NCBI GenBank assembly: GCA_037447605.1
Contig: CM074811.1
Location: 2,914,001 to 2,978,000, forward strand
Reading direction: 5' to 3'
Source: Zygnema circumcarinatum SAG 698-1b
Lineage: Eukaryota; Plantae; Zygnematophyceae
DNA length: 64,000 bases
Positions 53,182-64,000 of this stretch are shown one piece after another. The translations under genes and the position numbers were made by a program. Numbering within the stretch: the stretch's first letter is position 1; every line of letters starts with the position of its first letter. The notes beneath the pieces are model-generated. The model made no database searches and was not told the origin of the DNA. It was given only the letters and a program-made list of their open reading frames with translations.

Positions 53182-54386
53182 CAGTGCACTCACGTTATAG
53201 TGACATTGTTTATAAAAACAGCATGGATATATTGACGTTTTTTCCGGGAACGGAATTGCACCACTGCAGATCCTGCGCCAGTAGTGACGCCATTACGGAT
53301 ATAACGACGTTTGAAATGAACGGGATGATATATTGAACTCACGATGGCAAGGCCATCAAACGTACATGAAGAAAATCAACATCGGGAACCAAAGGGAGCG
53401 GTCACAATGAACTAAAGGTCAAAGAAAAAGTTTCTGAACGAATGTCTACTCCTAGGCTCAACAACACGGCACTAGAAGCAGCCGCAAAGGTCGCCAAGAT
53501 GTGGCGCAACACGCGTAGGAAGGGGTGGGCGACCACCGGGACGAGCACCAACAATCGCCGCACGCCGGAGGATGGTGGAAGCAAGGCAACGCTGCAAAGC
53601 GATAGAAATGCGCTGTCGATAAAAAGTCGCGAGGATTGCTGGGGGAGGGCTTCCGGGGCCGAGCATCTCAAAGGAGCGATGGGCGCACTGGCGAAGGAAG
53701 ACATCCAACCGAGCATCGAGGCAGCCAAAAATCTCGATCGCCAACGGAACAAACTCATCGGCTGAGTCGCGGTGAGCATACGCACGCTCCTTACGGAGGG
53801 CCGCGTCTCGAGTAGCGACGCCCTTGTGGTGTGCAGAACGGGATAATATGGCATGGCGAGTCGGATCAGCCAATACAACGTCCCCAAAAATATGCCGCGC
53901 GCCGTCTAAAAGAGCAAGGTCGGGACGCACGCCGCGCTCGCCAGTCGTAGTCTGCCGAGGTGGGATAACATGGGACGGCTCACATTGCACAAGGTAACCC
54001 GCCTCCTAAGCCACGGCGGCAATAGCGTCACGGACCGTTTGAAAAACCCTAATTGTTACTTTATATTCAAAATCTCGATATTATCCACCCACGTATCGGA
54101 AAATATGTTACAAATAACCGTATACATTATTGACAAATACCGTCAGATATCGAGTCGACCGTACACATCAACTTGACCGTACACATGCTCACTAGGTTCG
54201 TACACACCTACCCCAGTGACGACTCCCCAAAAAGTACAATGTACGGTATCAAAGGTGTACGGATATGCCGCAAAAACATCTGTAACAACATTGTCACTAT
54301 ATATGTTAAATGACAAACGGGTCATTACGGATATAGTGACACAAATATGTGCGGACCGACACGGTCACTATAACGTGAGTACCCCG
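53182..54386. mobile_element. Non-autonomous Tc1/mariner (pogo-like) element with TA target duplication
   Basis: Left TA|CAGTGCACTCACGTTATAGTGAC and right GTCACTATAACGTGAGTACCCCG|TA. The 17-bp core ACTCACGTTATAGTGAC is perfectly inverted (53188-53204 / 54364-54380). Internal ATTACGGATATA repeats. Confidence 0.8.
53317..54035 (-). mobile_element. 5'-truncated RLE-type (CRE-like) non-LTR retrotransposon with a 9-bp TSD, nested in the pogo-like element
   Basis: ORF remnant 53472-53990: VRPDLAL...IFGDVVLADP...AALRKERAY...FVPLAIEIFGCL...FYRQRISIALQR (restriction-like endonuclease RPD..D...K pattern). Flanked by the direct repeat CGTTTGAAA at 53308-53316 and 54036-54044. Confidence 0.85.
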
Positions 54387-55945: not shown

Positions 55946-58900
55946 TCAAGGAGAACGGCTCGGAGGGGGACGTCGAGGAGGAGGTCGACGGCTGGGAGGA
56001 GGTTTACGTGGAGGGGGACTTTTCGAAGGGGGCCGAGGACGGGGAGGAGGGGATCGTGAAGCTGCAAGAATGCAGGGCATTGTGTTAGTTCACATTCATA
56101 ATTAAAAGTGAACTCACTCCTTCCATAGCTTACATATTCTAATCGAAACACGTCCTTATAAACGTTCTGGGAGGATGCAGAACGAAATGAAAACCCATTC
56201 AAACTGCATTCAGTGTGCTCTAACAGCAACGACAATGTAAAAATTGATAGCAATGCGATAGTTTTCACAAGCTATGCCACCCTTTTACTTTTCCTTTCTT
56301 GCGAGTATCTGCAAGCAGCAGGTTGCAACTCACCGCATGTGCCCGATACCAGCGCATATCCCTTGTCGCATGTACACGTGGCCGTGTCGTACCCGCACGT
56401 GCCGCGGCCCCCGCACGCTCCCTCGGGAGACCCGCTCTGGCAGAAGGCCGCGCACTTTTGCGGAGATTTCTGCTTCTTAGGGGTTTTAGGGGCGCCACAT
56501 CCTGTGATATTACGAAAAATGCAGTTGCTGTTGAGATTGAGTGGGCAATACGATTTCCCAGACGCTGTAAGTTTGATTGGCCCGGAGAAGTAGTTGTATT
56601 GGACCTCCAGGTCCACTTCGTTATCGGTCGTAAGAGTTATGGAGCCAGTCAACTTGTTGTTGTTTAACTGCCTGCTGACATCAACGGTGGTGCGTTAGAG
56701 TGAGAGGGAGGAGGTTTCCCAAAGATCTAAAACCTTAAAGCCTAAACCCTAACCCTAATCCGTAAAATGGAAACACATTCACTCAAGAAAATTACGTCCA
56801 ATCTCTTGCATGCATGACTGAGCATTATTTTTCGTGAAAGAAGCTAGCGCCGTGATAGAAGTGAACAAAGCGAAACAATTTGTTCCTGAATTATGAGATA
56901 AGATCTCATGCAAACGCGAATTTAACGTTATAGTGTCCGAGGTACAAATGCTTTTCGCCAAGAACCAAAAAATTTCAAACTGCAAATATAACGTTATCGA
57001 TGCGGCGGTGCTTACAGGTACTCCAGCCGGGTGAGTTTAGAGATAAAGCCGGACACTCTCCCCTCCAGTTTGTTATTGTCCAGCAACCTACAGACATACA
57101 TAACGACAAAAAACTCAACGAGAAGGATTAGGCTTTTATCTGAACAAAAGTTCGAACCAAAGTACAGCAACTCCACGTTTAAAGTCCGTGAAAACATGCG
57201 GCCTTGAGCATGCATGCGTAAGGCCGCATGTGGGCAGCATGCATGCATGCGCGAAAAACTGCCAGAAATAAAAAAAAAGGCACTGAATAAACTTGCTGAC
57301 TCTACTAGCATTTCTATCACTGCCATTCCTGTCTGGCATAGCTATCTTTTACATTGCAAATTGAAGGGGGAAAACACTCACAAGTAGTGGAGATTCATAA
57401 GGTTGCCGATAGATTTTGGGATAGACCCCGTTAGGGAATTATTAGACAAGACTCTGCCAAAAAATAGGAAAGAAAGGCATCACAAATCTGGCCCCATGTT
57501 TGCAGCAAAAGCAAAAGTGACGTGGAAAGAATCCTCGAGTGAATGCGGATTTTTAGGTTTTCAGATTTATGAGGGAAAACACTTACAAGAAGTACAGATT
57601 TGCAAGGTTGCCGATAGAATCCGGGATAGACCCCGATAGGGCATTCCCATCCAAGAATCTGCCAAAACAAAAAAAAAAAAGGGACGGCATAACGAATTTG
57701 GCCCATGTTTTTAGCAAAAGCAAAAGACACGTGGAAAGAATGCTCAAGTGAATGCGGCGGACTTTTAGTATTTCAGATTAAAGGGGAAAAATACTTACAA
57801 TGCTTGCAGATTCGCAAGGCTGCCGATAGCATGCGGGATAGAACCCGAGAGAAAATTACGTGAGCAGCTTCTGCCAAATTATAAAAAAAATAGGAACTGA
57901 ATAAATATGCTCCCACAGCTCCATGCTCCCAATGCTGTTGACTAGCATTTCTGTCACAGGCATACCTCTGTCTAAAATTTCAATCACTTTCATTTCAGAT
58001 ATATGAAGAAAAATACTTACAAGACGTTCAGATTCTTGGGGAAAAATACTTACAATGTGGACAGTTCCGAAAGGTTGCCGATAGAATCGGGAATAGACCC
58101 CGTAAGTGAATTAGAATCCAAGATTCTGCCAAAAATAAAAAAAAGGCACTGAATAAAATTGCTGCCGCGATTGGCATGTATATCACTGGCATTCCTCTAT
58201 CTGGCATTTCTATCACTTTCATTTCAAATTGAAGGGGAAAAGTACTTACAAGTACTTCAGATTCGCAAGGTTGCCGATAAAATCCGGGAAAGACCCCGTT
58301 AGGGAATTATTAGACAAGTCTCTGCCAAAAAATAGAAAAGAAAGGCGTCACGAATCCGGCCCATGCTTGCAGCAGATGAAACAGTGCCTTTGAAAGAATG
58401 CTCAAGTGAATGCGGCGGATTTTTAGGTTTTCAAATTTATGGGGAAAAATACTTACAATAAATGCAGATTCGCAAGGCTGCCGATAGCATGCGGGATAGA
58501 CCCCGAGAGGATACAACCATAGCAGCTTCTGCCAAAATTAAAAAAAAAAAAATAGGAACTGAATAAACGTGCTGCCATGACTAGCATTTCTGTCACAGGC
58601 ATTCCTCTGTCTGAAATTTCTATCACTTTCATTCCAGATTTCTGGGGAAAATACTTACAAGGCGTTCAGATTCTTGGAGGAAAAATACTTACAATACGGA
58701 CAGATTCGCAAGGTTGCCGATAGAATCCGGAATATACCCTCTTAGAGCATTCCCATCCAAGAATCTGCCAAAAAAAGAAAAAAAAGGGCACTGAATAAAC
58801 ATGCTGCCACGATTAGCATTTCTATCGCTTGAATCCATCTGTCTGACCTTTCTATCTCTATAATATCAGAAAAATACTTACAATTCATGCAAATTTGTAA

Positions 58901-60071
58901 GGTTGCCGATAGAATCTGGAATAGACCCCGAGAGGGAATTTTTACCCAAGTATCTGTAGAAAATAAAACGAAGAGTCATTGAACAGACACGCTGCAAAGA
59001 CTAGCATTCCTCTATCTGGAATTTCTACAACTTTCATTCCAAATTAGTGGGGAAAAGGACTTACAATCCTTGCAGGTTCACAAGGTTGCTGATAGAATCC
59101 GGGATAGACCCCGCGAGGGAATTGTAACCCAAGTTTCTGCCAAAAAGTAGAAAAGAAAGGTATCACAAATTTGGCCCATGTTTGCAGCAAAAGCGAAAGT
59201 GACGTGGAAAGAATGCTCAAGTGAATGCGGGGGAGTCGAGCATCGACAACACGTCCGTGCGCGCGACGTGACACGTGACCAGGACGCAAGCACGCACGCA
59301 TTGGCAGCTCCACTTCTCCGAAAGTTGCAGTGCTCCTACAAATGAAGCACATCCCAACATCTGAGCCCTCCCTACCACAGTGTACACACAACCATGCATC
59401 GGAAGCATCCTGATGGAACTTTATGAAATGGAGCCACTTACAAGGATGTCAGCTTTGTCAGGTTGCCGATGGCAGGTGAAATGCTTCCTCCAATTTCGAA
59501 GTTCTGTAAATAACTGCATAAGGCAGGTTAGCAGTGAGAGCGTCAGAAGAAGAAAGGGCCGCGGGCAGTAGCAGGACTGCTCCGGGCGGCCCTTTTCATT
59601 CCATTTCTGTGGGGTCTTCTTCCCGTAGACCCTCCTCGTAGCCTCGGGCTGCAGTTCAGGAATCACAAACGGTATTCAGTCAAAGTGTAGCTCACATGTC
59701 AAAAACGCGCCCGCTTGCGTCGCATGTGATCCCACTCCATTTGCTGCAAAGGCGGTTACTCGACTTCCAGGAGGATAGGAGATCTTGTCCGTTGGTGAAT
59801 GCCGCTTTGACAGCGAGAAGAGCGTCCCCTGCGCCCAAGCGCAAGCAGATGCAGGATTGGATTGAGGCCGCGGTGCGCTTCAAAAAGCACAAACAGAGGC
59901 CCCGCCGCGGGCAGGCCGCCTCTCCCCTTCTTCCATAGAGGGCGGGCGGGCGGGCCGCGGCGGCTCACTGTCTCGCGGGTCGATGGCCTGAGCGGCGGCT
60001 TCGCGCGGGGCGGCGGCGGCGGCAAAGAGGAGGAGCGCCGCCGCGAGAGAGAGAGACCGCGCGCGCGCCAT
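55946..60071 (-). CDS. LRR gene A: secreted LRR + EGF-like + Arg/Pro-rich-tail protein, ~493 aa. Exons 60071-59969, 59828-59696, eleven 72-nt LRR exons (59513-59442, 59136-59065, 58953-58882, 58764-58693, 58528-58457, 58321-58250, 58125-58054, 57870-57799, 57658-57587, 57453-57382, 57087-57016), 56671-56334, 56061-55946
   Basis: Signal peptide, plant LRR N-cap (ALLAVKAAF...LSSW...CSKWSGITCD), 24-aa plant LRRs (xLxxNSLTGSIPDSIGNLxNLxxL), Cys-rich cap and EGF-like CGGRGTCGYDTATCTCDKGYALVSGTC. The total of 1482 nt is in frame. The last exon choice (SRSPPPRPRPP...SRSP*) is my best guess. Confidence 0.85.
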
Positions 60072-61189
60072 CGCGGCCAAGCGCCCGCCGGAGACACCAG
60101 GGGACGGGACGCGGGGGCGGCCAGAGGCGAGGAGAGGGCGGGGAGGGGCGGGAGGGAGGGGCCTGCGGGGAGGGAGGGCGCCTTCCTCCGCCAAGGCTTG
60201 GGACAGGGACGGACGGCGGCGCGGTTGCGCGGGGTTACTATATACTATGGGACTGCCATACCTCGTACGAATGGCGGTCTCGATGCACCGACACTTATAT
60301 ACGGTCAGGATGCTTCCACCGACATTATTAATAAGGCACGGACATCACAAGAGGAGGCCGCGAGCCAATGCGCGCTGTGGACCAATCAGCATCGGTCAAT
60401 TTCTTTCGCGCCAGCTCGCATACAGTGCGGCGGCTTCCGCCATGGCTTGCGGGGACCGCGGGGCGCATCATGACAAAGCTGCCCACCCAGGATTCCAGCT
60501 GGTGGTCTCACTGCATACGGACGGACAACTGGAGTCATGCCACGTCACATGTCAACCGAGCGCACTGATTGGCTGCGGTGAGATTTGCGGTGTGCATCCA
60601 GAGCGCCCATGATGAATGGGCGGTGAAGGAGACAAAACATTTCCTGAGCTGACTACCGATGTATTTTATTTTTTTGAAAGTTTTTGTTTTTGTGAAGTCA
60701 AATCTTTAATTTCTTTTGGGTACTGAGAAATTCTCACTTTTTTTGGCTAGATACAGAACTTTTTTCGCCGGGCAGATTTTATTTTACAAAAAGGGCAAGT
60801 GATTTCCCGCCCCAATGGATTTATCACTACCCATCTTTTTGAGGATGCCGAAGGAGGCAAACATCTCGCGGCGGACCGCAAATCGAACGGCCGCGAATGA
60901 GACGAATGAGACATGTATCTTTTTCTTCTTGCGAACGAATATGCGGACGGATGGGCCATGCGAATATTATTTCCTCGCTGGCACCTTGCGATTATTTTAC
61001 CGATATGGTCCGTTGAAGAAATTCCGGGCAGCGAATGAGGGAGCGCCGCGTGGCCCCCCGGAAGCCATGGCGGAGGAAGGCGCCCTCCCTCCCCGCAGGC
61101 CCCTCCCTCCCTCCCCTCCGCGCCCTCTCCTCGCCTCTGGCCGCCCCCGCGTCCCGTCCCCTCCTGTCTCCGGCGGGCGCTTGGCCGCG

Positions 61190-64000
61190 ATGGCGCGCGC
61201 GCGGTCTCTCTCTCTCGCGGCGGCGCTCCTCCTCTTTGCCGCCGCCGCCGCCCCGCGCGAAGCCGCCGCTCAGGCCATCGACCCGCGAGACAGTGAGCCG
61301 CCGCGGCCCGCCCGCCCGCCCTCTATGGAAGAAGGGGAGAGGCGGCCTGCCCGCGGCGGGGCCTCTGTTTGTGCTTTTTGAAGCGGACCGCGGCCTCAAT
61401 CCAATCCTGCATCTGCTCGCGCTTGGGCGCAGGGAACACTCTTCTCGCTGTCAAAGCGGCATTCAAATACGTACGAGATGTCACCTCCTGGAAGTGGAGT
61501 AACACCGACTGCAGCAAATGGAGAGGGATCACATGCGACGCAAGCGGTCGCGTTACTTCGCTGTGAGCCACACTTTGACTGACCAATGCTTGTGATTTTG
61601 GAGGGCTCCGCGAATTCCATAGCTGCTGAAATGCAGCCCGAGGCTGCGAGGAGGGTTTTGCGGGAAGAAGCCTCCTCAGAAAGGGAATAAAAAGGGCCGC
61701 CCGGAGCAGTCCTTCTACTGCTCGCGACCCTTCCTCTGACGCTCTCACTGCTAACCTGCCTTATGCAGAAGCTTATGGTTCTCCGACGTTGCAGGAACCA
61801 TTTCACCTACCATCGGCAATCTGACAAAGCTGACATACTTGTAAGTGGCTCCATTCTATAAAGTTCCATAAGGATGCGTTCCATGCATGTTTGCGATTAC
61901 AATGTGCTAGGGAGGGCTCAGATCTTAGGGGTACTAAATTTGTAGAAGCACTGAAGCACAGCAAATTTCCAGGAAGCGGAGATGCCAATTCGTGCGTGCT
62001 CGCGTCCTCGTTAAGTGTCACGTCACGCACACGGACGTGTTGTCGCTGCTCGACTCCGCCGCATTCACTTGAGCATTCTTTCCACGTCACTTTTGCTTGT
62101 GCTGCAAACATGGGCCAGATTTGTGAAGCCTTTCTTTTTCTGATTTTGGCAGAAGCTTGTATGGTAATACCCTAACAGGGTCTATCCCGAATTCTATCGG
62201 AAACCTTGCGAATCTACAAACATTGTAAGTATTTTTCCCCTTAAATCTGAAATGAAAGTGATAGAAATGCCAGACAGAGGAATGACAGTGATAGAAATGC
62301 TATTCGTGGCAGCATGTTTATTCAGTGCCTTATTTTTTTTATTTTTGGCAGATCCTTGGCTTCTAATTCCCTAACTGGATCTATCCCGGATTCTATCGGC
62401 AACCTTGTGAATCTGCAAGGCTTGTAAGTATCTTTCCTCATAAATATGAAATGAAAGTGATAGAAATGTTAGACAATGAAATGCCAGTGATAGAATTGCT
62501 AGTAGTGGAAGCATGTTTATTCAGTGCCTATTTTTTAATTTGGCAGATCCTTGGCTTCTAATTCCCTAACGGGGTCAATCCCGGATTCTATCGGCAACCT
62601 TGCGAATCTGCAAGACTTGTAAGTTTTTTTTGTCAATAAATCTGAAATGAAAGTGATAGAAGTGCTAGTCGTGGCAGCATGTTTATTTAGTACGGGGTCT
62701 TTTTTTTTTTTTTTTGGCAGAGAATTGGTTTTTAATTCCCTAACGGGTCCTATCCCGGATTCTATTGGCAAGCTTGCGAATCTGCAAGGATTGTAAGTAT
62801 ATTTCCTCGTAAATCTGAAATCAAAGTGGTAGAAATGTCAGACAGAGGAATGCCAGTGATAGAAATGCTAGTCGTGGCAGCATGTTTATTGAGTGCCTAC
62901 TTTTTTATTTTTTGGCAGATACTTGTATGGTAATTCCCTAACAGGGTCTATCCCGGATTCTATCGGCATCCTTGTAAATCTGCAAGCATTGTAAGTATTT
63001 TTCCCAATAAATATGAAATGAAAGTGATAGAAATGTTAGACAATGAAATGCCAGTGATAGAATTGCTAGTAGTGGAAGCATGTTTATTCAGTGCCTATTT
63101 TTTAATTTGGCAGAGATCCTTGGCTTCCAATTCCCTAACGGGGTCAATCCCGCATTCTATCGGCAACCTTGTGAATCTGCAGTACTTGTAAGTATTTTTC
63201 CTCATAAATCTGAAATGAAAGTGATAGAAATGCCAGACAAAGGAATGCCAGTGATAGAAATGCTAGTCGTGGCAGCATGTTTATTGAGTGCCTACTTTTT
63301 TATTTTTTGGCAGATACTTGTATGGTAATTCCCTAACAGGGTCTATCCCGGATTCTATCGGCATCCTTGTAAATCTGCAAGCATTGTAAGTATTTTTCCC
63401 AATAAATATGAAATGAAAGTGATAGAAATGTTAGACAATGAAATGCCAGTGATAGAATTGCTAGTAGTGGAAGCATGTTTATTCAGTGCCTATTTTTTAA
63501 TTTGGCAGATCCTTGGCTTCCAATTCCCTAACGGGGTCAATCCCGCATTCTATCGGCAACCTTGTGAATCTGCAGTACTTGTAAGTATTTTTCCTCATAA
63601 ATCTGAAATGAAAGTGATAGAAATGCCAGACAAAGGAATGCCAGTGATAGAAATGCTAGTCGTGGCAGCATGTTTATTGAGTGCCTACTTTTTTATTTTT
63701 TGGCAGATACTTGTATGGTAATTCCCTAACAGGGTCTATCCCGGATTCTATCGGCATCCTTGTAAATCTGCAAGCATTGTAAGTATTTTTCCCAATAAAT
63801 ATGAAATGAAAGTGATAGAAATGTTAGACAATGAAATGCCAGTGATAGAATTGCTAGTAGTGGAAGCATGTTTATTCAGTGCCTATTTTTTAATTTGGCA
63901 GATCCTTGGCTTCCAATTCCCTAACGGGGTCAATCCCGCATTCTATCGGCAACCTTGTGAATCTGCAGTACTTGTAAGTATTTTTCCTCATAAATCTGAA
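61190..64000 (+). CDS. LRR gene B (3' end outside window). Exons 61190-61292, 61433-61562, then 72-nt LRR exons at 61769, 62153, 62352, 62547, 62721, 62919, 63116, 63314, 63509, 63707, 63902
   Basis: Exon 1 has the same sequence as gene A exon 1; N-cap LLAVKAAF...SW...CSKWRGITCD. Each LRR exon is GGCAG|...TT|GTAAGT, phase 2, e.g. SLYGNTLTGSIPNSIGNLANLQTL. The exon at 63116 has an extra AG at its acceptor. Confidence 0.9.
62150..64000 (+). repeat. Tandem array of ~175-200-bp intron+exon cassettes; ~393-bp dimeric higher-order repeat from ~62900
   Basis: Exon starts 62919/63314/63707 (YLYGNSL...LQAL) and 63116/63509/63902 (SLASNSL...LQYL). The intervening introns are near-identical. Confidence 0.95.

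What the first reader, a model, noticed from the sequence alone, without database searches (positions are those of the whole stretch)
55946..64000. One-LRR-per-exon cassette system: two genes built from tandemly amplified 72-nt exon + intron modules
At least 22 LRR exons (11 per gene) are 72 nt, phase 2-2. In the amplified arrays the introns are copies of only two templates: type X ...GAAAGTGATAGAAATGCCAGACAGAGGAATG...GCATGTTTATTCAGTGCC...GGCAG, and type Y ...CCGCATTCACTTGAGCATTCTTTCCACGTCAC...GGCAG. Symmetric phase means any cassette can be duplicated, deleted, swapped or skipped without frameshift. Conserved intron sequence supplies the homology for unequal crossover. This resembles LRR exon shuffling described for brown-algal ROCO/NB-ARC genes, but here in extracellular plant-type LRR proteins. 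It is a candidate diversity-generating recognition system (immunity or mating); the function is inference.
Basis: partly seen in the sequence, partly recalled or inferred. Interest (0 to 1): 0.88.

Follow-up and report, generated by a model that had tools for sequence, protein, structure and literature searches.

The report
Paired secreted LRR genes, one repeat per exon
Two back-to-back algal genes for secreted leucine-rich-repeat proteins are built from 72-base exons, one repeat each, that multiplied together with their introns; this is a real and tidy case of a known way for binding proteins to grow and diversify, not a new diversity-making machine.

Summary
Two head-to-head paralogous genes each carry eleven 72-nt, phase 2-2 exons encoding one plant-type LRR. 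Gene A is on the minus strand (55946-60071, 493 aa). Gene B is on the plus strand (61190 onward, cut by the window end). The introns between the amplified exons belong to two families, X (15 copies) and Y (5 copies). RNA contigs from two runs confirm 10 gene A splice junctions exactly, plus one more through a loose end.

The arrays grew by tandem duplication of exon+intron units. Three array boundaries lie inside introns. One deletion footprint is present in two copies. A two-exon, 393-bp unit in gene B is triplicated with identical sequence, and read depth of about 2.6x single copy supports it.

Five ligand-face codons differ about 5-fold more than the introns (0.417 against 0.087 per nt). 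Scaffold codons match the intron rate.

Nothing shows a regulated or somatic diversity generator. No exon-skipping joint attributable to gene A was among those listed, there are no spare or inverted cassettes, and two DNA data sets agree where contigs were listed.

Fixed-length LRR exon arrays are already described in Ectocarpus and Tetrahymena, and SERK genes have the same layout. The scan has noted the same array type at several other loci of this genome, and one follow-up reached a similar verdict. Verdict: new member of a known kind, moderate interest.

The parts
55946..60071 (-). Gene A, complete coding region: 15 exons, 493 aa. Signal peptide, LRRNT, 11 one-LRR exons, terminal LRRs with a Cys-rich/EGF-like module, and a short SPPP-type proline-rich tail.
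   Evidence: Exon joining gives one open frame with its stop ending at 55946. Ten introns are confirmed by RNA joints with GT..AG ends, and one more by a loose end. Introns 13 and 14 and the last two exons are predicted only.
59969..60071 (-). Gene A exon 1 (103 nt): start codon and predicted signal peptide.
   Evidence: Translation starts MARARSLSLAAALLLFAAAAAP. The RNA joint 59827/8 to 59968/9 confirms the donor. Signal-peptide status is inferred from the sequence pattern.
59696..59828 (-). Gene A exon 2 (133 nt): plant-type LRR N-terminal cap.
   Evidence: Pfam LRRNT_2 at E 6.8e-10, 39.5 bits against a cut-off of 20.7.
59442..59513 (-). Gene A cassette A1: 72 nt, phase 2-2, outside the amplified family.
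   Evidence: 78% identical to B1 and 43-50% to the other gene A cassettes. RNA joints on both sides.
57382..59136 (-). Gene A amplified array. Nine 72-nt exons: 59065-59136, 58882-58953, 58693-58764, 58457-58528, 58250-58321, 58054-58125, 57799-57870, 57587-57658 and 57382-57453. They are separated by X introns (i4, i5, i6, i8, i9) and Y introns (i7, i10, i11).
   Evidence: RNA joints at 57453>57587, 57658>57799, 57870>58054, 58125>58250, 58321>58457, 58764>58882 and 58953>59065.
57016..57087 (-). Gene A cassette A11: 72 nt, phase 2-2, divergent, outside the amplified family.
   Evidence: An RNA contig runs from exon A10 into this exon's sequence, seen as a loose end at 57380.
57088..57381 (-). 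Intron A_i12. An X-type copy (57259-57381) is followed by 171 nt of unique sequence. This is the 3' boundary of the amplified array, and it lies inside an intron.
   Evidence: Alignment; nhmmer X hit at 57381-57259.
58659..58692 (-). Deletion footprint at the 5' end of intron A_i6: about 14 nt of an intron start, the last 19 nt of an LRR exon, and a second GTAAGT donor.
   Evidence: Alignment. The X homology starts only at 58658.
58021..58053 (-). A copy of the same footprint in intron A_i9. This shows that a multi-exon block was duplicated after the deletion.
   Evidence: RNA uses the first donor, joint 57870>58054 skipping 183 nt.
56334..56671 (-). Gene A exon 14 (338 nt): last irregular LRRs, a Cys pair, and an EGF-like six-Cys module.
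   Evidence: Translation. Pfam EGF_2 and EGF_Teneurin hits are below cut-off, at E about 0.01. Best database relatives are a Mesotaenium LRR-kinase and a Closterium LRR protein.
55946..56061 (-). Gene A last exon: 37-aa proline-rich tail with four SPPP motifs, then the stop codon.
   Evidence: No Pfam hit. Splicing was not checked with RNA.
61190..64000 (+). Gene B, cut by the window end. Exon 1 is 61190-61292 and exon 2 (LRRNT) is 61433-61562. The eleven 72-nt exons are 61769-61840, 62153-62224, 62352-62423, 62547-62618, 62721-62792, 62919-62990, 63116-63187, 63314-63385, 63509-63580, 63707-63778 and 63902-63973.
   Evidence: Open frame through all 13 exons. LRRNT_2 at E 2.7e-5. Low RNA depth on its unique exons in run X16 (13-33) and none in X25.
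62846..64000 (+). The newest amplification: a 393-bp unit (two exons and two X introns) present 2.9 times with identical sequence. Its left boundary lies inside X intron B_i7.
   Evidence: Copies 2 and 3 show 0 mismatches over the 294 nt compared up to the window end, within a 494-nt exact run at offset 393. Copy 1 differs only by a 2-bp insertion. All 6 differences between B_i7 and B_i9 lie in the first 53 nt. A DNA contig has depth 211, against a median of 80 (range 34-97) for single-copy contigs.
63114..63115 (+). Extra AG before exon 63116-63187, probably an assembly indel.
   Evidence: The only X1 DNA contig laid there lacks the two letters, 211.4 of 211.4 depth.
59829..60191 (-). Near-identical 5' block of gene A: about 120 nt upstream, exon 1 and intron 1. 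It is the inverted-repeat partner of 61070-61432.
   Evidence: Exon 1 is 100% and intron 1 is 98.6% identical, with 4 mismatches in the 120 nt upstream. Further in, identity falls to 78-89%.
61070..61432 (+). Near-identical 5' block of gene B, partner of 59829-60191.
60192..61069 (.). Spacer between the two divergently oriented genes, presumed to hold a shared or paired promoter region.
   Evidence: Near zero RNA depth at 60101-61100 in both RNA runs. Promoter function is inferred.

Best explanation
This is a pair of recently duplicated, divergently oriented genes from a large lineage-specific family of secreted plant-type LRR proteins. The organism is probably a zygnematophycean streptophyte alga.

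Each protein has a signal peptide, an LRRNT cap and a solenoid of 24-residue LRRs. Gene A ends in a Cys-rich/EGF-like module and a short SPPP tail, which suggests association with the cell wall.

The gene layout has one 72-nt phase-2 exon per repeat, and it is older than the arrays. The arrays then grew and shrank in the germline by unequal crossing-over or replication slippage between homologous exon+intron units. That is why the introns are copies of two templates.

After each duplication, the five codons that face the ligand on the beta-strand (two at the end of one exon, three at the start of the next) changed several-fold faster than the introns. The scaffold codons kept pace with the introns. 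This fits diversifying selection on binding specificity.

Shown here: gene structure, splicing of gene A, intron families, duplication boundaries, and the rate contrast. Inferred: secretion, wall association, ligand binding, selection as the cause, and any role in immunity or mating.
For: Exon and phase structure and open frames.

RNA joints with GT..AG ends for 10 gene A introns in runs X16 and X25, plus a loose end for A_i12.

Protein family:
- LRRNT_2 on exon 2 of both genes.
- Gene A aligns over its length with Closterium P0004 (34%, residues 27-453) and with P0018 (35%, residues 9-469).
- P0018 matches plant LRR-RLK ectodomains in the PDB at up to E 1e-119.

Layout older than the amplification: A1, B1 and A11 share size and phase but not sequence, and their outer introns are not X or Y.

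Unit duplication:
- X and Y alignments.
- Array boundaries inside introns i3 and A_i12.
- The boundary of the newest 393-bp unit lies inside B_i7.
- A deletion footprint is shared by A_i6 and A_i9.
- The arrays differ in X/Y order between A and B although the flanking introns are 85-99% identical.

Rate contrast:
- In four nearest-intron pairs, introns differ 47/540 (0.087), scaffold 51/456 (0.113, not significant), and the five exposed codons 50/120 (0.417, Fisher p 1e-16).
- Exposed codons have pN 0.61 against scaffold pS 0.26.
- For LRR1 between A and B, dN is 0.31 and dS is 0.125.
- Between A and B, exons differ more than introns (20.8% against 13.3%, p 0.007).
Against: Selection is inferred from few sites. 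Short-tract gene conversion from the many paralogs could import the differences instead.

The last two exons of gene A, including the EGF-like module and the Pro tail, have no RNA check here. The EGF hit is below Pfam's cut-off.

Gene B's 3' end lies outside the window, and its expression is weak.

The full-length spliced proteins could not be given to Pfam or to structure prediction, because they have no reference. Domain calls therefore rest on single exons and on local BLAST.

The Closterium homolog is intronless, so the age of the one-repeat-per-exon layout in this family is not settled.
Confidence: 0.78

Rival explanations
1. A programmed diversity-generating system. Cassettes are combined by regulated exon skipping, or by somatic or very frequent recombination, giving many receptor isoforms from one locus.
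For: Every central cassette can join any other in frame and restores a Leu codon. Long identical intron and exon tracts exist in gene B. In-frame skipping of an LRR exon is documented for MtSERK3 (PMC3061892), and alternative splicing for brown-algal ROCO genes (PMC11378527).
Against: RNA contigs of two runs give gene A's cassettes joined in genomic order at the ten listed junctions plus one loose end (A_i6 was not listed). The odd joints listed carry different letters at the junction codons, so they come from paralogs, not from skipping. There are no spare, inverted or inactivated cassettes in introns. DNA contigs of two studies match the assembly. Caveats: contigs drop rare isoforms, and 18 joints were not shown.
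Confidence: 0.07
2. The excess difference at the five exposed codons comes mainly from short-tract gene conversion, or from mosaic recombination with the many paralogous cassettes. It does not come from point mutation under positive selection.
For: For a given unit, the best-matching partner differs between the exon, the upstream 60 nt and the downstream 60 nt. B6 looks like a B2-type 5' end on a B3-type 3' end. 37% of informative site pairs fail the four-gamete test. Hundreds of DNA contigs from elsewhere in the genome match these exons at 95% or more. The 5' blocks of A and B look homogenised.
Against: The PHI-type test shows no distance dependence of incompatibility (p 0.17). The exposed codons sit at both exon ends, directly next to well-conserved intron sequence, so many tiny and precisely placed tracts would be needed. 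Exposed-codon pN also exceeds scaffold pS and the intron rate in the closest pairs.
Confidence: 0.2
3. The identical 393-bp triplication in gene B is an assembly artefact, as was reported for a three-fold exon repeat at another locus of this genome.
For: Copies are 100% identical. The one difference, a 2-bp AG, is absent from the short-read contig, which shows the assembly is imperfect here.
Against: The X1 DNA contig covering the unit has word depth 211, against a median of 80 (range 34-97) for seven single-copy contigs of the same stretch. That is about 2.6x, matching about 3 copies. The tool warns that depth is not a strict copy number, and related units share some words.
Confidence: 0.1
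4. X and Y are mobile introner-like elements that inserted independently between LRR codons.
For: There are only two intron templates, each highly similar among its copies.
Against: In 64 kb, X and Y occur only between LRR exons of these two genes, and always in sense orientation. The flanking exons are homologous too, and the units form higher-order repeats. There is no stable fold and no Rfam match. I saw no terminal inverted repeats by eye.
Confidence: 0.02

Closest known systems
Ectocarpus ROCO / 'type I LRR exon' genes (Zambounis et al. 2012, PMC3341825; brown-algal ROCO, PMC11378527)
   Same: Each LRR is encoded by one 72-nt (24-aa) exon. The motif is plant-like (GxIP). Recently duplicated loci differ in their exon arrays. 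Positively selected sites lie on the LRR surface. That paper also reports type I exons in 46 non-ROCO, non-kinase LRR loci.
   Different: The ROCO proteins carry a GTPase (ROC-COR) core. These proteins instead have a signal peptide, an LRRNT cap and an EGF-like end. The exon register differs: the Ectocarpus exon starts at the G of GxxP, whereas here the intron splits the Leu codon inside the beta-strand. Ectocarpus introns hold spare, inactivated and inverted LRR exons. None is found here by nhmmer, only two short footprints.
Tetrahymena LRR genes with 90-bp exon arrays (PMC6564038)
   Same: [quoted passage not shown] The authors explain them by clonal expansion of exon/intron units through unequal crossing-over. 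The family is large, young and species-specific.
   Different: The exons are 90 bp (30 aa), not 72. The organism is a ciliate. The LRR type differs and there is no LRRNT/EGF frame. A retrotransposon is implicated there, and none is seen here.
Land-plant LRR-RLK subfamily II genes (SERK/NIK) (PMC7496461, PMC3061892)
   Same: The order of exons matches: a signal-peptide exon, then an N-cap exon with the Cys pair, then 24-aa LRRs on roughly one exon each. The last LRR and cap of gene A find SERK1 as the best solved structure, though weakly (E 0.018). An in-frame LRR-exon-skipped isoform is known for MtSERK3.
   Different: SERKs have a fixed five LRRs, a transmembrane helix and a kinase, and are conserved rather than amplified. 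Whether the intron sits in the same codon and phase was not tested here. From memory, SERK exon sizes are 133/72/144/72/72; this is unverified.
Plant LRR receptor-like proteins and LRR-extensins (Cf-9/EIX-type RLPs, LRX)
   Same: They share the extracellular plant-specific LRR solenoid with LRRNT_2. In RLPs, diversifying change falls on the xxLxLxx face and repeat number varies through unequal crossing-over. LRX proteins share the order LRR, Cys-rich hinge, Pro-rich extensin-like tail. Family homologs match LRX and RLK ectodomains.
   Different: By general knowledge, most RLP and LRX LRR domains sit in one large exon, so repeat gain and loss there happens within coding sequence. Gene A's Pro-rich tail is only 37 aa. 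No membrane anchor is seen.

Membership tests
Plant-specific (24-residue) extracellular LRR proteins | Repeats of 24 residues fitting LxxLxLxxNxLxGxIPxxLxxLxx | tested here: met
   In 15 distinct central cassettes, L7, G9, P12, I15, L18 and L21 are invariant, N5 is present in 14 of 15, and I11 in 14 of 15.
Plant-specific (24-residue) extracellular LRR proteins | N-terminal cap of the LRRNT_2 type after a signal peptide | tested here: met
   Pfam LRRNT_2 scores 39.5 bits (gene A) and 24.8 bits (gene B) against a cut-off of 20.7. The signal peptide is judged from the sequence only.
LRR receptor-like kinases | Transmembrane helix and cytoplasmic protein kinase domain after the LRRs | tested here: not met
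   The gene A frame stops after the Pro-rich tail at 55946. By eye, no kinase-like ORF appears in the 9 kb downstream on either strand (ORFs not scanned against Pfam). Gene B cannot be judged because it is cut by the window. The related Mesotaenium protein P0001 does carry a kinase.
EGF-like domain proteins | Six-Cys EGF module recognised by a curated profile | tested here: inconclusive
   EGF_2 scores 16.4 bits (cut-off 22.1) and EGF_Teneurin 16.5 bits (cut-off 24.3). The CxCxxGYx6C spacing is present.
Ectocarpus-type LRR exon shuffling loci | One 72-nt exon per LRR | tested here: met
   splicing confirmed.
Ectocarpus-type LRR exon shuffling loci | Intact or inactivated LRR exons inside introns, often on the opposite strand | tested here: not met
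   An nhmmer profile of the cassettes finds only the 19 amplified coding exons and weak hits to A1 and B1. It finds nothing in introns or antisense. Only two 19-nt exon-end relics were seen.
Ectocarpus-type LRR exon shuffling loci | Recently duplicated loci differ in cassette content | tested here: met
   Gene A's intron order from i3 to i12 is Y, X, X, X, Y, X, X, Y, Y, X. Gene B's from i3 onward is Y followed by X only. Their flanking introns are 85-99% identical.
Somatic LRR-cassette assembly (lamprey VLR type) | An incomplete germline gene flanked by banks of non-coding donor cassettes, with somatic variants | tested here: not met
   Both genes are complete in-frame exon arrays. No donor cassettes occur elsewhere in the 64-kb window. 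RNA matches the germline order. Somatic variation itself is not testable with contigs.
LRR-extensin (LRX) proteins | A long extensin domain with many SP3-5 repeats after the LRR and Cys-rich hinge | tested here: inconclusive
   Only four SPPP motifs occur in a 37-aa tail. There is no Pfam hit, and the exon is not confirmed by RNA.
SERK/LRR-RLK II gene layout | Introns at the same codon and phase of the LRR as in SERK genes | not tested
   The exon order agrees with the description in PMC7496461. No SERK genomic sequence could be brought in. The search returned only long RLP/RLK proteins.

The most novel reading that the evidence does not exclude
This alga, from the lineage nearest to land plants, keeps a genome-wide repertoire of secreted LRR(-EGF) proteins built from freely interchangeable 72-nt cassettes. 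Homologous introns guide frequent gain, loss and exchange of those cassettes. Strains would then differ in cassette number and order, and some loci would also emit exon-skipped isoforms. That would make it an evolvable extracellular recognition repertoire (immunity or mating) predating land-plant receptor families.
Probability: 0.12. Interest if true: 0.7.

Novelty: new member of a known kind. Interest (0 to 1): 0.38.

Why it matters
The locus is a clean natural experiment. Two gene copies share near-identical 5' ends but have rebuilt their LRR arrays differently since they split. Duplication boundaries, a deletion footprint and a brand-new triplication are all still readable.

It shows, in a probable close algal relative of land plants, that extracellular plant-type LRR domains can grow by exon+intron unit duplication while their ligand face diversifies.

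This bears on how plant receptor ectodomains expanded. It does not reveal a new mechanism.

Tried and rejected
- **Spare or inverted cassettes, as in Ectocarpus.** An nhmmer profile over the whole window found none.
- **Mobile introner origin of X and Y.** Their copies are confined to these two genes in this window. Rejected.
- **Functional RNA inside the conserved introns.** No Rfam family was found, and fold z-scores of -0.05, 0.42, 1.07 and -1.40 are unremarkable. Rejected.
- **Formal recombination signal.** A PHI-type permutation on 29 informative sites gave p 0.17. Inconclusive.
- **Block structure of gene A by self-BLAST.** This gave only long 65-75% alignments in several registers. The full history was not resolved.
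- **Mesotaenium homolog gene structure.** It is not on record. The P0018 locus is a short contig without visible introns.
- **Bringing in a SERK gene to compare intron register.** The search with P0001 residues 1-240 returned only long angiosperm RLP/RLK proteins, and paper searches for SERK exon sizes found nothing.
- **Kinase exons downstream of gene A.** None seen among the ORFs.
- **Full-length spliced proteins.** No 3D model was made.
- **Read evidence.** The single read-laying run covered 57301-63300. Gene A's last two introns and the far end of gene B's array therefore have no read evidence.

Full report
**What is there**

Reading 55.5-64.0 kb shows eukaryotic genes with GTAAGT...GGCAG introns.

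A scan of the whole 64-kb window, both strands, looked for AG + 72 nt + GT with an open LRR-like frame. All hits fell between 57.3 and 64.0 kb. A looser scan gives eleven 72-nt exons on each strand.

Joining them to the upstream exons gives two open reading frames:
- Gene A is on the minus strand, with 15 exons from 60071 down to a stop ending at 55946, 493 aa.
- Gene B is on the plus strand from 61190. It stays open through 13 exons until the window cuts it at 64000.

Every 72-nt exon starts with the third base of a codon and ends with two bases of the next one (phase 2-2).

**The proteins**

- Exon 1 of both genes encodes a typical signal-peptide-like start. This is inferred from the pattern.
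- Exon 2 scores above Pfam's cut-off for LRRNT_2 in both genes.
- The cassettes fit the plant-specific 24-residue LRR consensus, with invariant L, G, P, I, L and L positions.
- Gene A continues with a 338-nt exon holding the last irregular repeats, a Cys pair and an EGF-like six-Cys module. The Pfam EGF hits are below cut-off.
- Gene A ends with a 37-aa tail carrying four SPPP motifs.
- By eye, no kinase ORF lies downstream.

A search of 1.8 billion representatives with the 112-aa C-terminal exon found only 16 weak relatives. The best came from Mesotaenium (an LRR-EGF-kinase) and Closterium.

Local BLAST aligns gene A over nearly its full length with the Closterium protein (34%) and with a Logan-derived protein, P0018 (35%). 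P0018 in turn matches plant LRR-RLK ectodomains in the PDB at up to E 1e-119.

I therefore read the organism as a zygnematophycean or other streptophyte alga.

**Transcription**

RNA contigs of two runs from different studies were laid on 57301-63300. They give joints with GT..AG ends at exactly the predicted borders of gene A introns 1-5 and 7-11. A loose end reads into exon A11 across intron 12. Intron 6 was not among the joints listed. Introns 13 and 14 lay outside the stretch.

Gene A word depth is 360-590 in X16. Gene B's unique exons reach only 13-33 in X16 and 0 in X25.

The unusual joints listed (for example 58123>58701 and 63180>62932) have exactly exon-to-exon geometry. They carry 10-20 other letters at the junction codons, so they come from expressed paralogs, not from skipping in these genes.

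About 700 DNA contigs of run X1 match parts of the stretch at 95% or more. The cassette family is therefore large in this genome.

**The introns**

Alignment confirms two templates.
- X occurs in A_i4 (diverged), i5, i6, i8, i9 and i12, and in B_i4 to B_i12.
- Y occurs in A_i7, i10 and i11, and as the 3' part of the long intron 3 of both genes.
- X and Y share their first 28 nt or so and their last 12 nt or so.
- Profiles of X and Y hit nothing else in the window.
- Neither matches an Rfam family or folds better than shuffles.

**How the arrays were made**

- A1, B1 and A11 have the same size and phase as the other cassettes but only 32-53% identity to them. Their outer introns are unrelated to X and Y. 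The one-repeat-per-exon layout is therefore older than the amplification.
- The amplified part of gene A begins inside intron 3 (about 170 unique nt, then Y). It ends inside intron 12 (X, then 171 unique nt).
- Gene B carries a 393-bp unit of two exons and two introns. From 62846 to the window end it is present 2.9 times with identical sequence, apart from a 2-bp AG.
- All six differences between B_i7 and B_i9 lie in the first 53 nt, so that boundary too is inside an intron.
- An X1 short-read DNA contig lacks the AG. Its depth is 211, against a median of 80 (range 34-97) for single-copy contigs, which fits about three real copies and an assembly indel. Here the repeat looks real, but depth is only a rough guide.
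- Introns A_i6 and A_i9 both start with a 33-34-nt footprint: an intron start, the last 19 nt of an LRR exon, and a second donor. This is the scar of a cassette deletion that was later copied with a multi-exon block. RNA for A_i9 shows that the first donor is used; the A_i6 junction was not among the joints listed.
- The two genes share 98-100% identity over about 360 nt at their 5' ends, but 78-89% further in. Their X/Y order differs. The arrays were therefore remodelled after the inverted gene duplication.
- Every central cassette ends in TT and begins with A, so any join restores Leu.

**Rate contrast**

Amino-acid variation concentrates at cassette codons 1, 3, 4, 22 and 23. These are the x positions of xxLxLxx, which by established LRR structural knowledge line the concave face. 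The intron splits this strand.

In the four pairs of units with the most similar introns:
- introns differ at 0.087 per nt;
- scaffold codons differ at 0.113 (not significant against introns);
- the five exposed codons differ at 0.417 (p 1e-16).

Over all pairs, exposed-codon pN is 0.61 against scaffold pS of 0.26. For LRR1 between A and B, dN is 0.31 and dS is 0.125. Between A and B, exons differ more than the introns beside them (p 0.007).

This fits diversifying selection. Import by short conversion tracts from paralogs is not excluded. Best partners differ between an exon and its flanks, although a PHI-type test was not significant.

**Comparison with what is known**

- One 72-nt exon per LRR, with arrays remodelled between recent duplicates, is described for Ectocarpus ROCO and other LRR loci (PMC3341825). 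Those loci have spare and inverted exons in their introns, which are absent here, and the exon register differs.
- Tetrahymena has tens of thousands of 90-bp LRR exons separated by phase-2 introns, explained by clonal expansion and unequal crossing-over (PMC6564038).
- Land-plant SERK/LRR-RLK II genes have the same order: a signal-peptide exon, an N-cap exon, then about one LRR per exon (PMC7496461). MtSERK3 has an in-frame LRR-exon-skipped isoform (PMC3061892). Whether the intron register is the same could not be tested.
- The Closterium homolog is intronless.
- No paper in the library combines streptophyte algae, LRR and exon shuffling.

The scan has already noted the same kind of array at several other loci of this genome. 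One follow-up reached a similar verdict.

**Verdict**

It is unsupported as a dedicated diversity-generating system.

This is a new member of a known kind and a good teaching example. Its relevance to the origin of plant receptor ectodomains is moderate.

Noticed in passing
window 63114-63115: The assembly has an extra AG in front of exon 63116-63187. The only short-read DNA contig of run X1 laid there lacks it. This is probably an assembly indel, and all three 393-bp units would then be identical.
   Followed up: partly
window 59829-60191 and 61070-61432: The two genes are 98-100% identical over about 120 nt upstream, exon 1 and intron 1, but only 78-89% identical beyond that. This looks like gene conversion between the arms of the inverted duplication.
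   Followed up: partly
window 61205-61434: Very abundant RNA contigs (depth 1,500-3,000) cover exon 1 and run on through 'intron 1'. They carry three variant letters (at 61319, 61359, 61396) and then diverge into unrelated sequence. This suggests a third, highly expressed copy of this 5' module elsewhere in the genome.
   Followed up: no
window 61288-61439: A DNA contig of run X1 (depth 84) joins exon 1 to exon 2 without intron 1, with CC at the junction. This may be a paralog lacking that intron, or a retrocopy.
   Followed up: no
window 56741-56767: A short telomere-like run (CCTAAACCCTAACCCTAA on the plus strand) sits inside gene A intron 13. Other notes on this genome mention telomere-like arrays around exons.
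   Followed up: no
window 62352-63187 (joints): RNA contigs from paralogs match gene B exons at 95% or more on both sides of an exon-exon junction. They carry entirely different letters in the 10-20 nt of junction (exposed) codons. Across the family, scaffolds are conserved and only the binding-face codons differ.
   Followed up: partly
L001 3001-4671 (Closterium sp. NIES-68): The Closterium relative of gene A (556 aa, with LRRNT, LRRs and the same C-terminal module) is encoded by 1,671 uninterrupted bases. It has no introns.
   Followed up: partly
window 62376: Both DNA runs, and about half of the RNA depth, read A where the assembly has T, inside exon B3. This is either an assembly error or cross-laid paralog contigs.
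   Followed up: no
window 53472-53990 (minus strand): A 172-aa ORF downstream of gene A resembles a fragment of a transposable-element protein. It was not scanned against any library.
   Followed up: no
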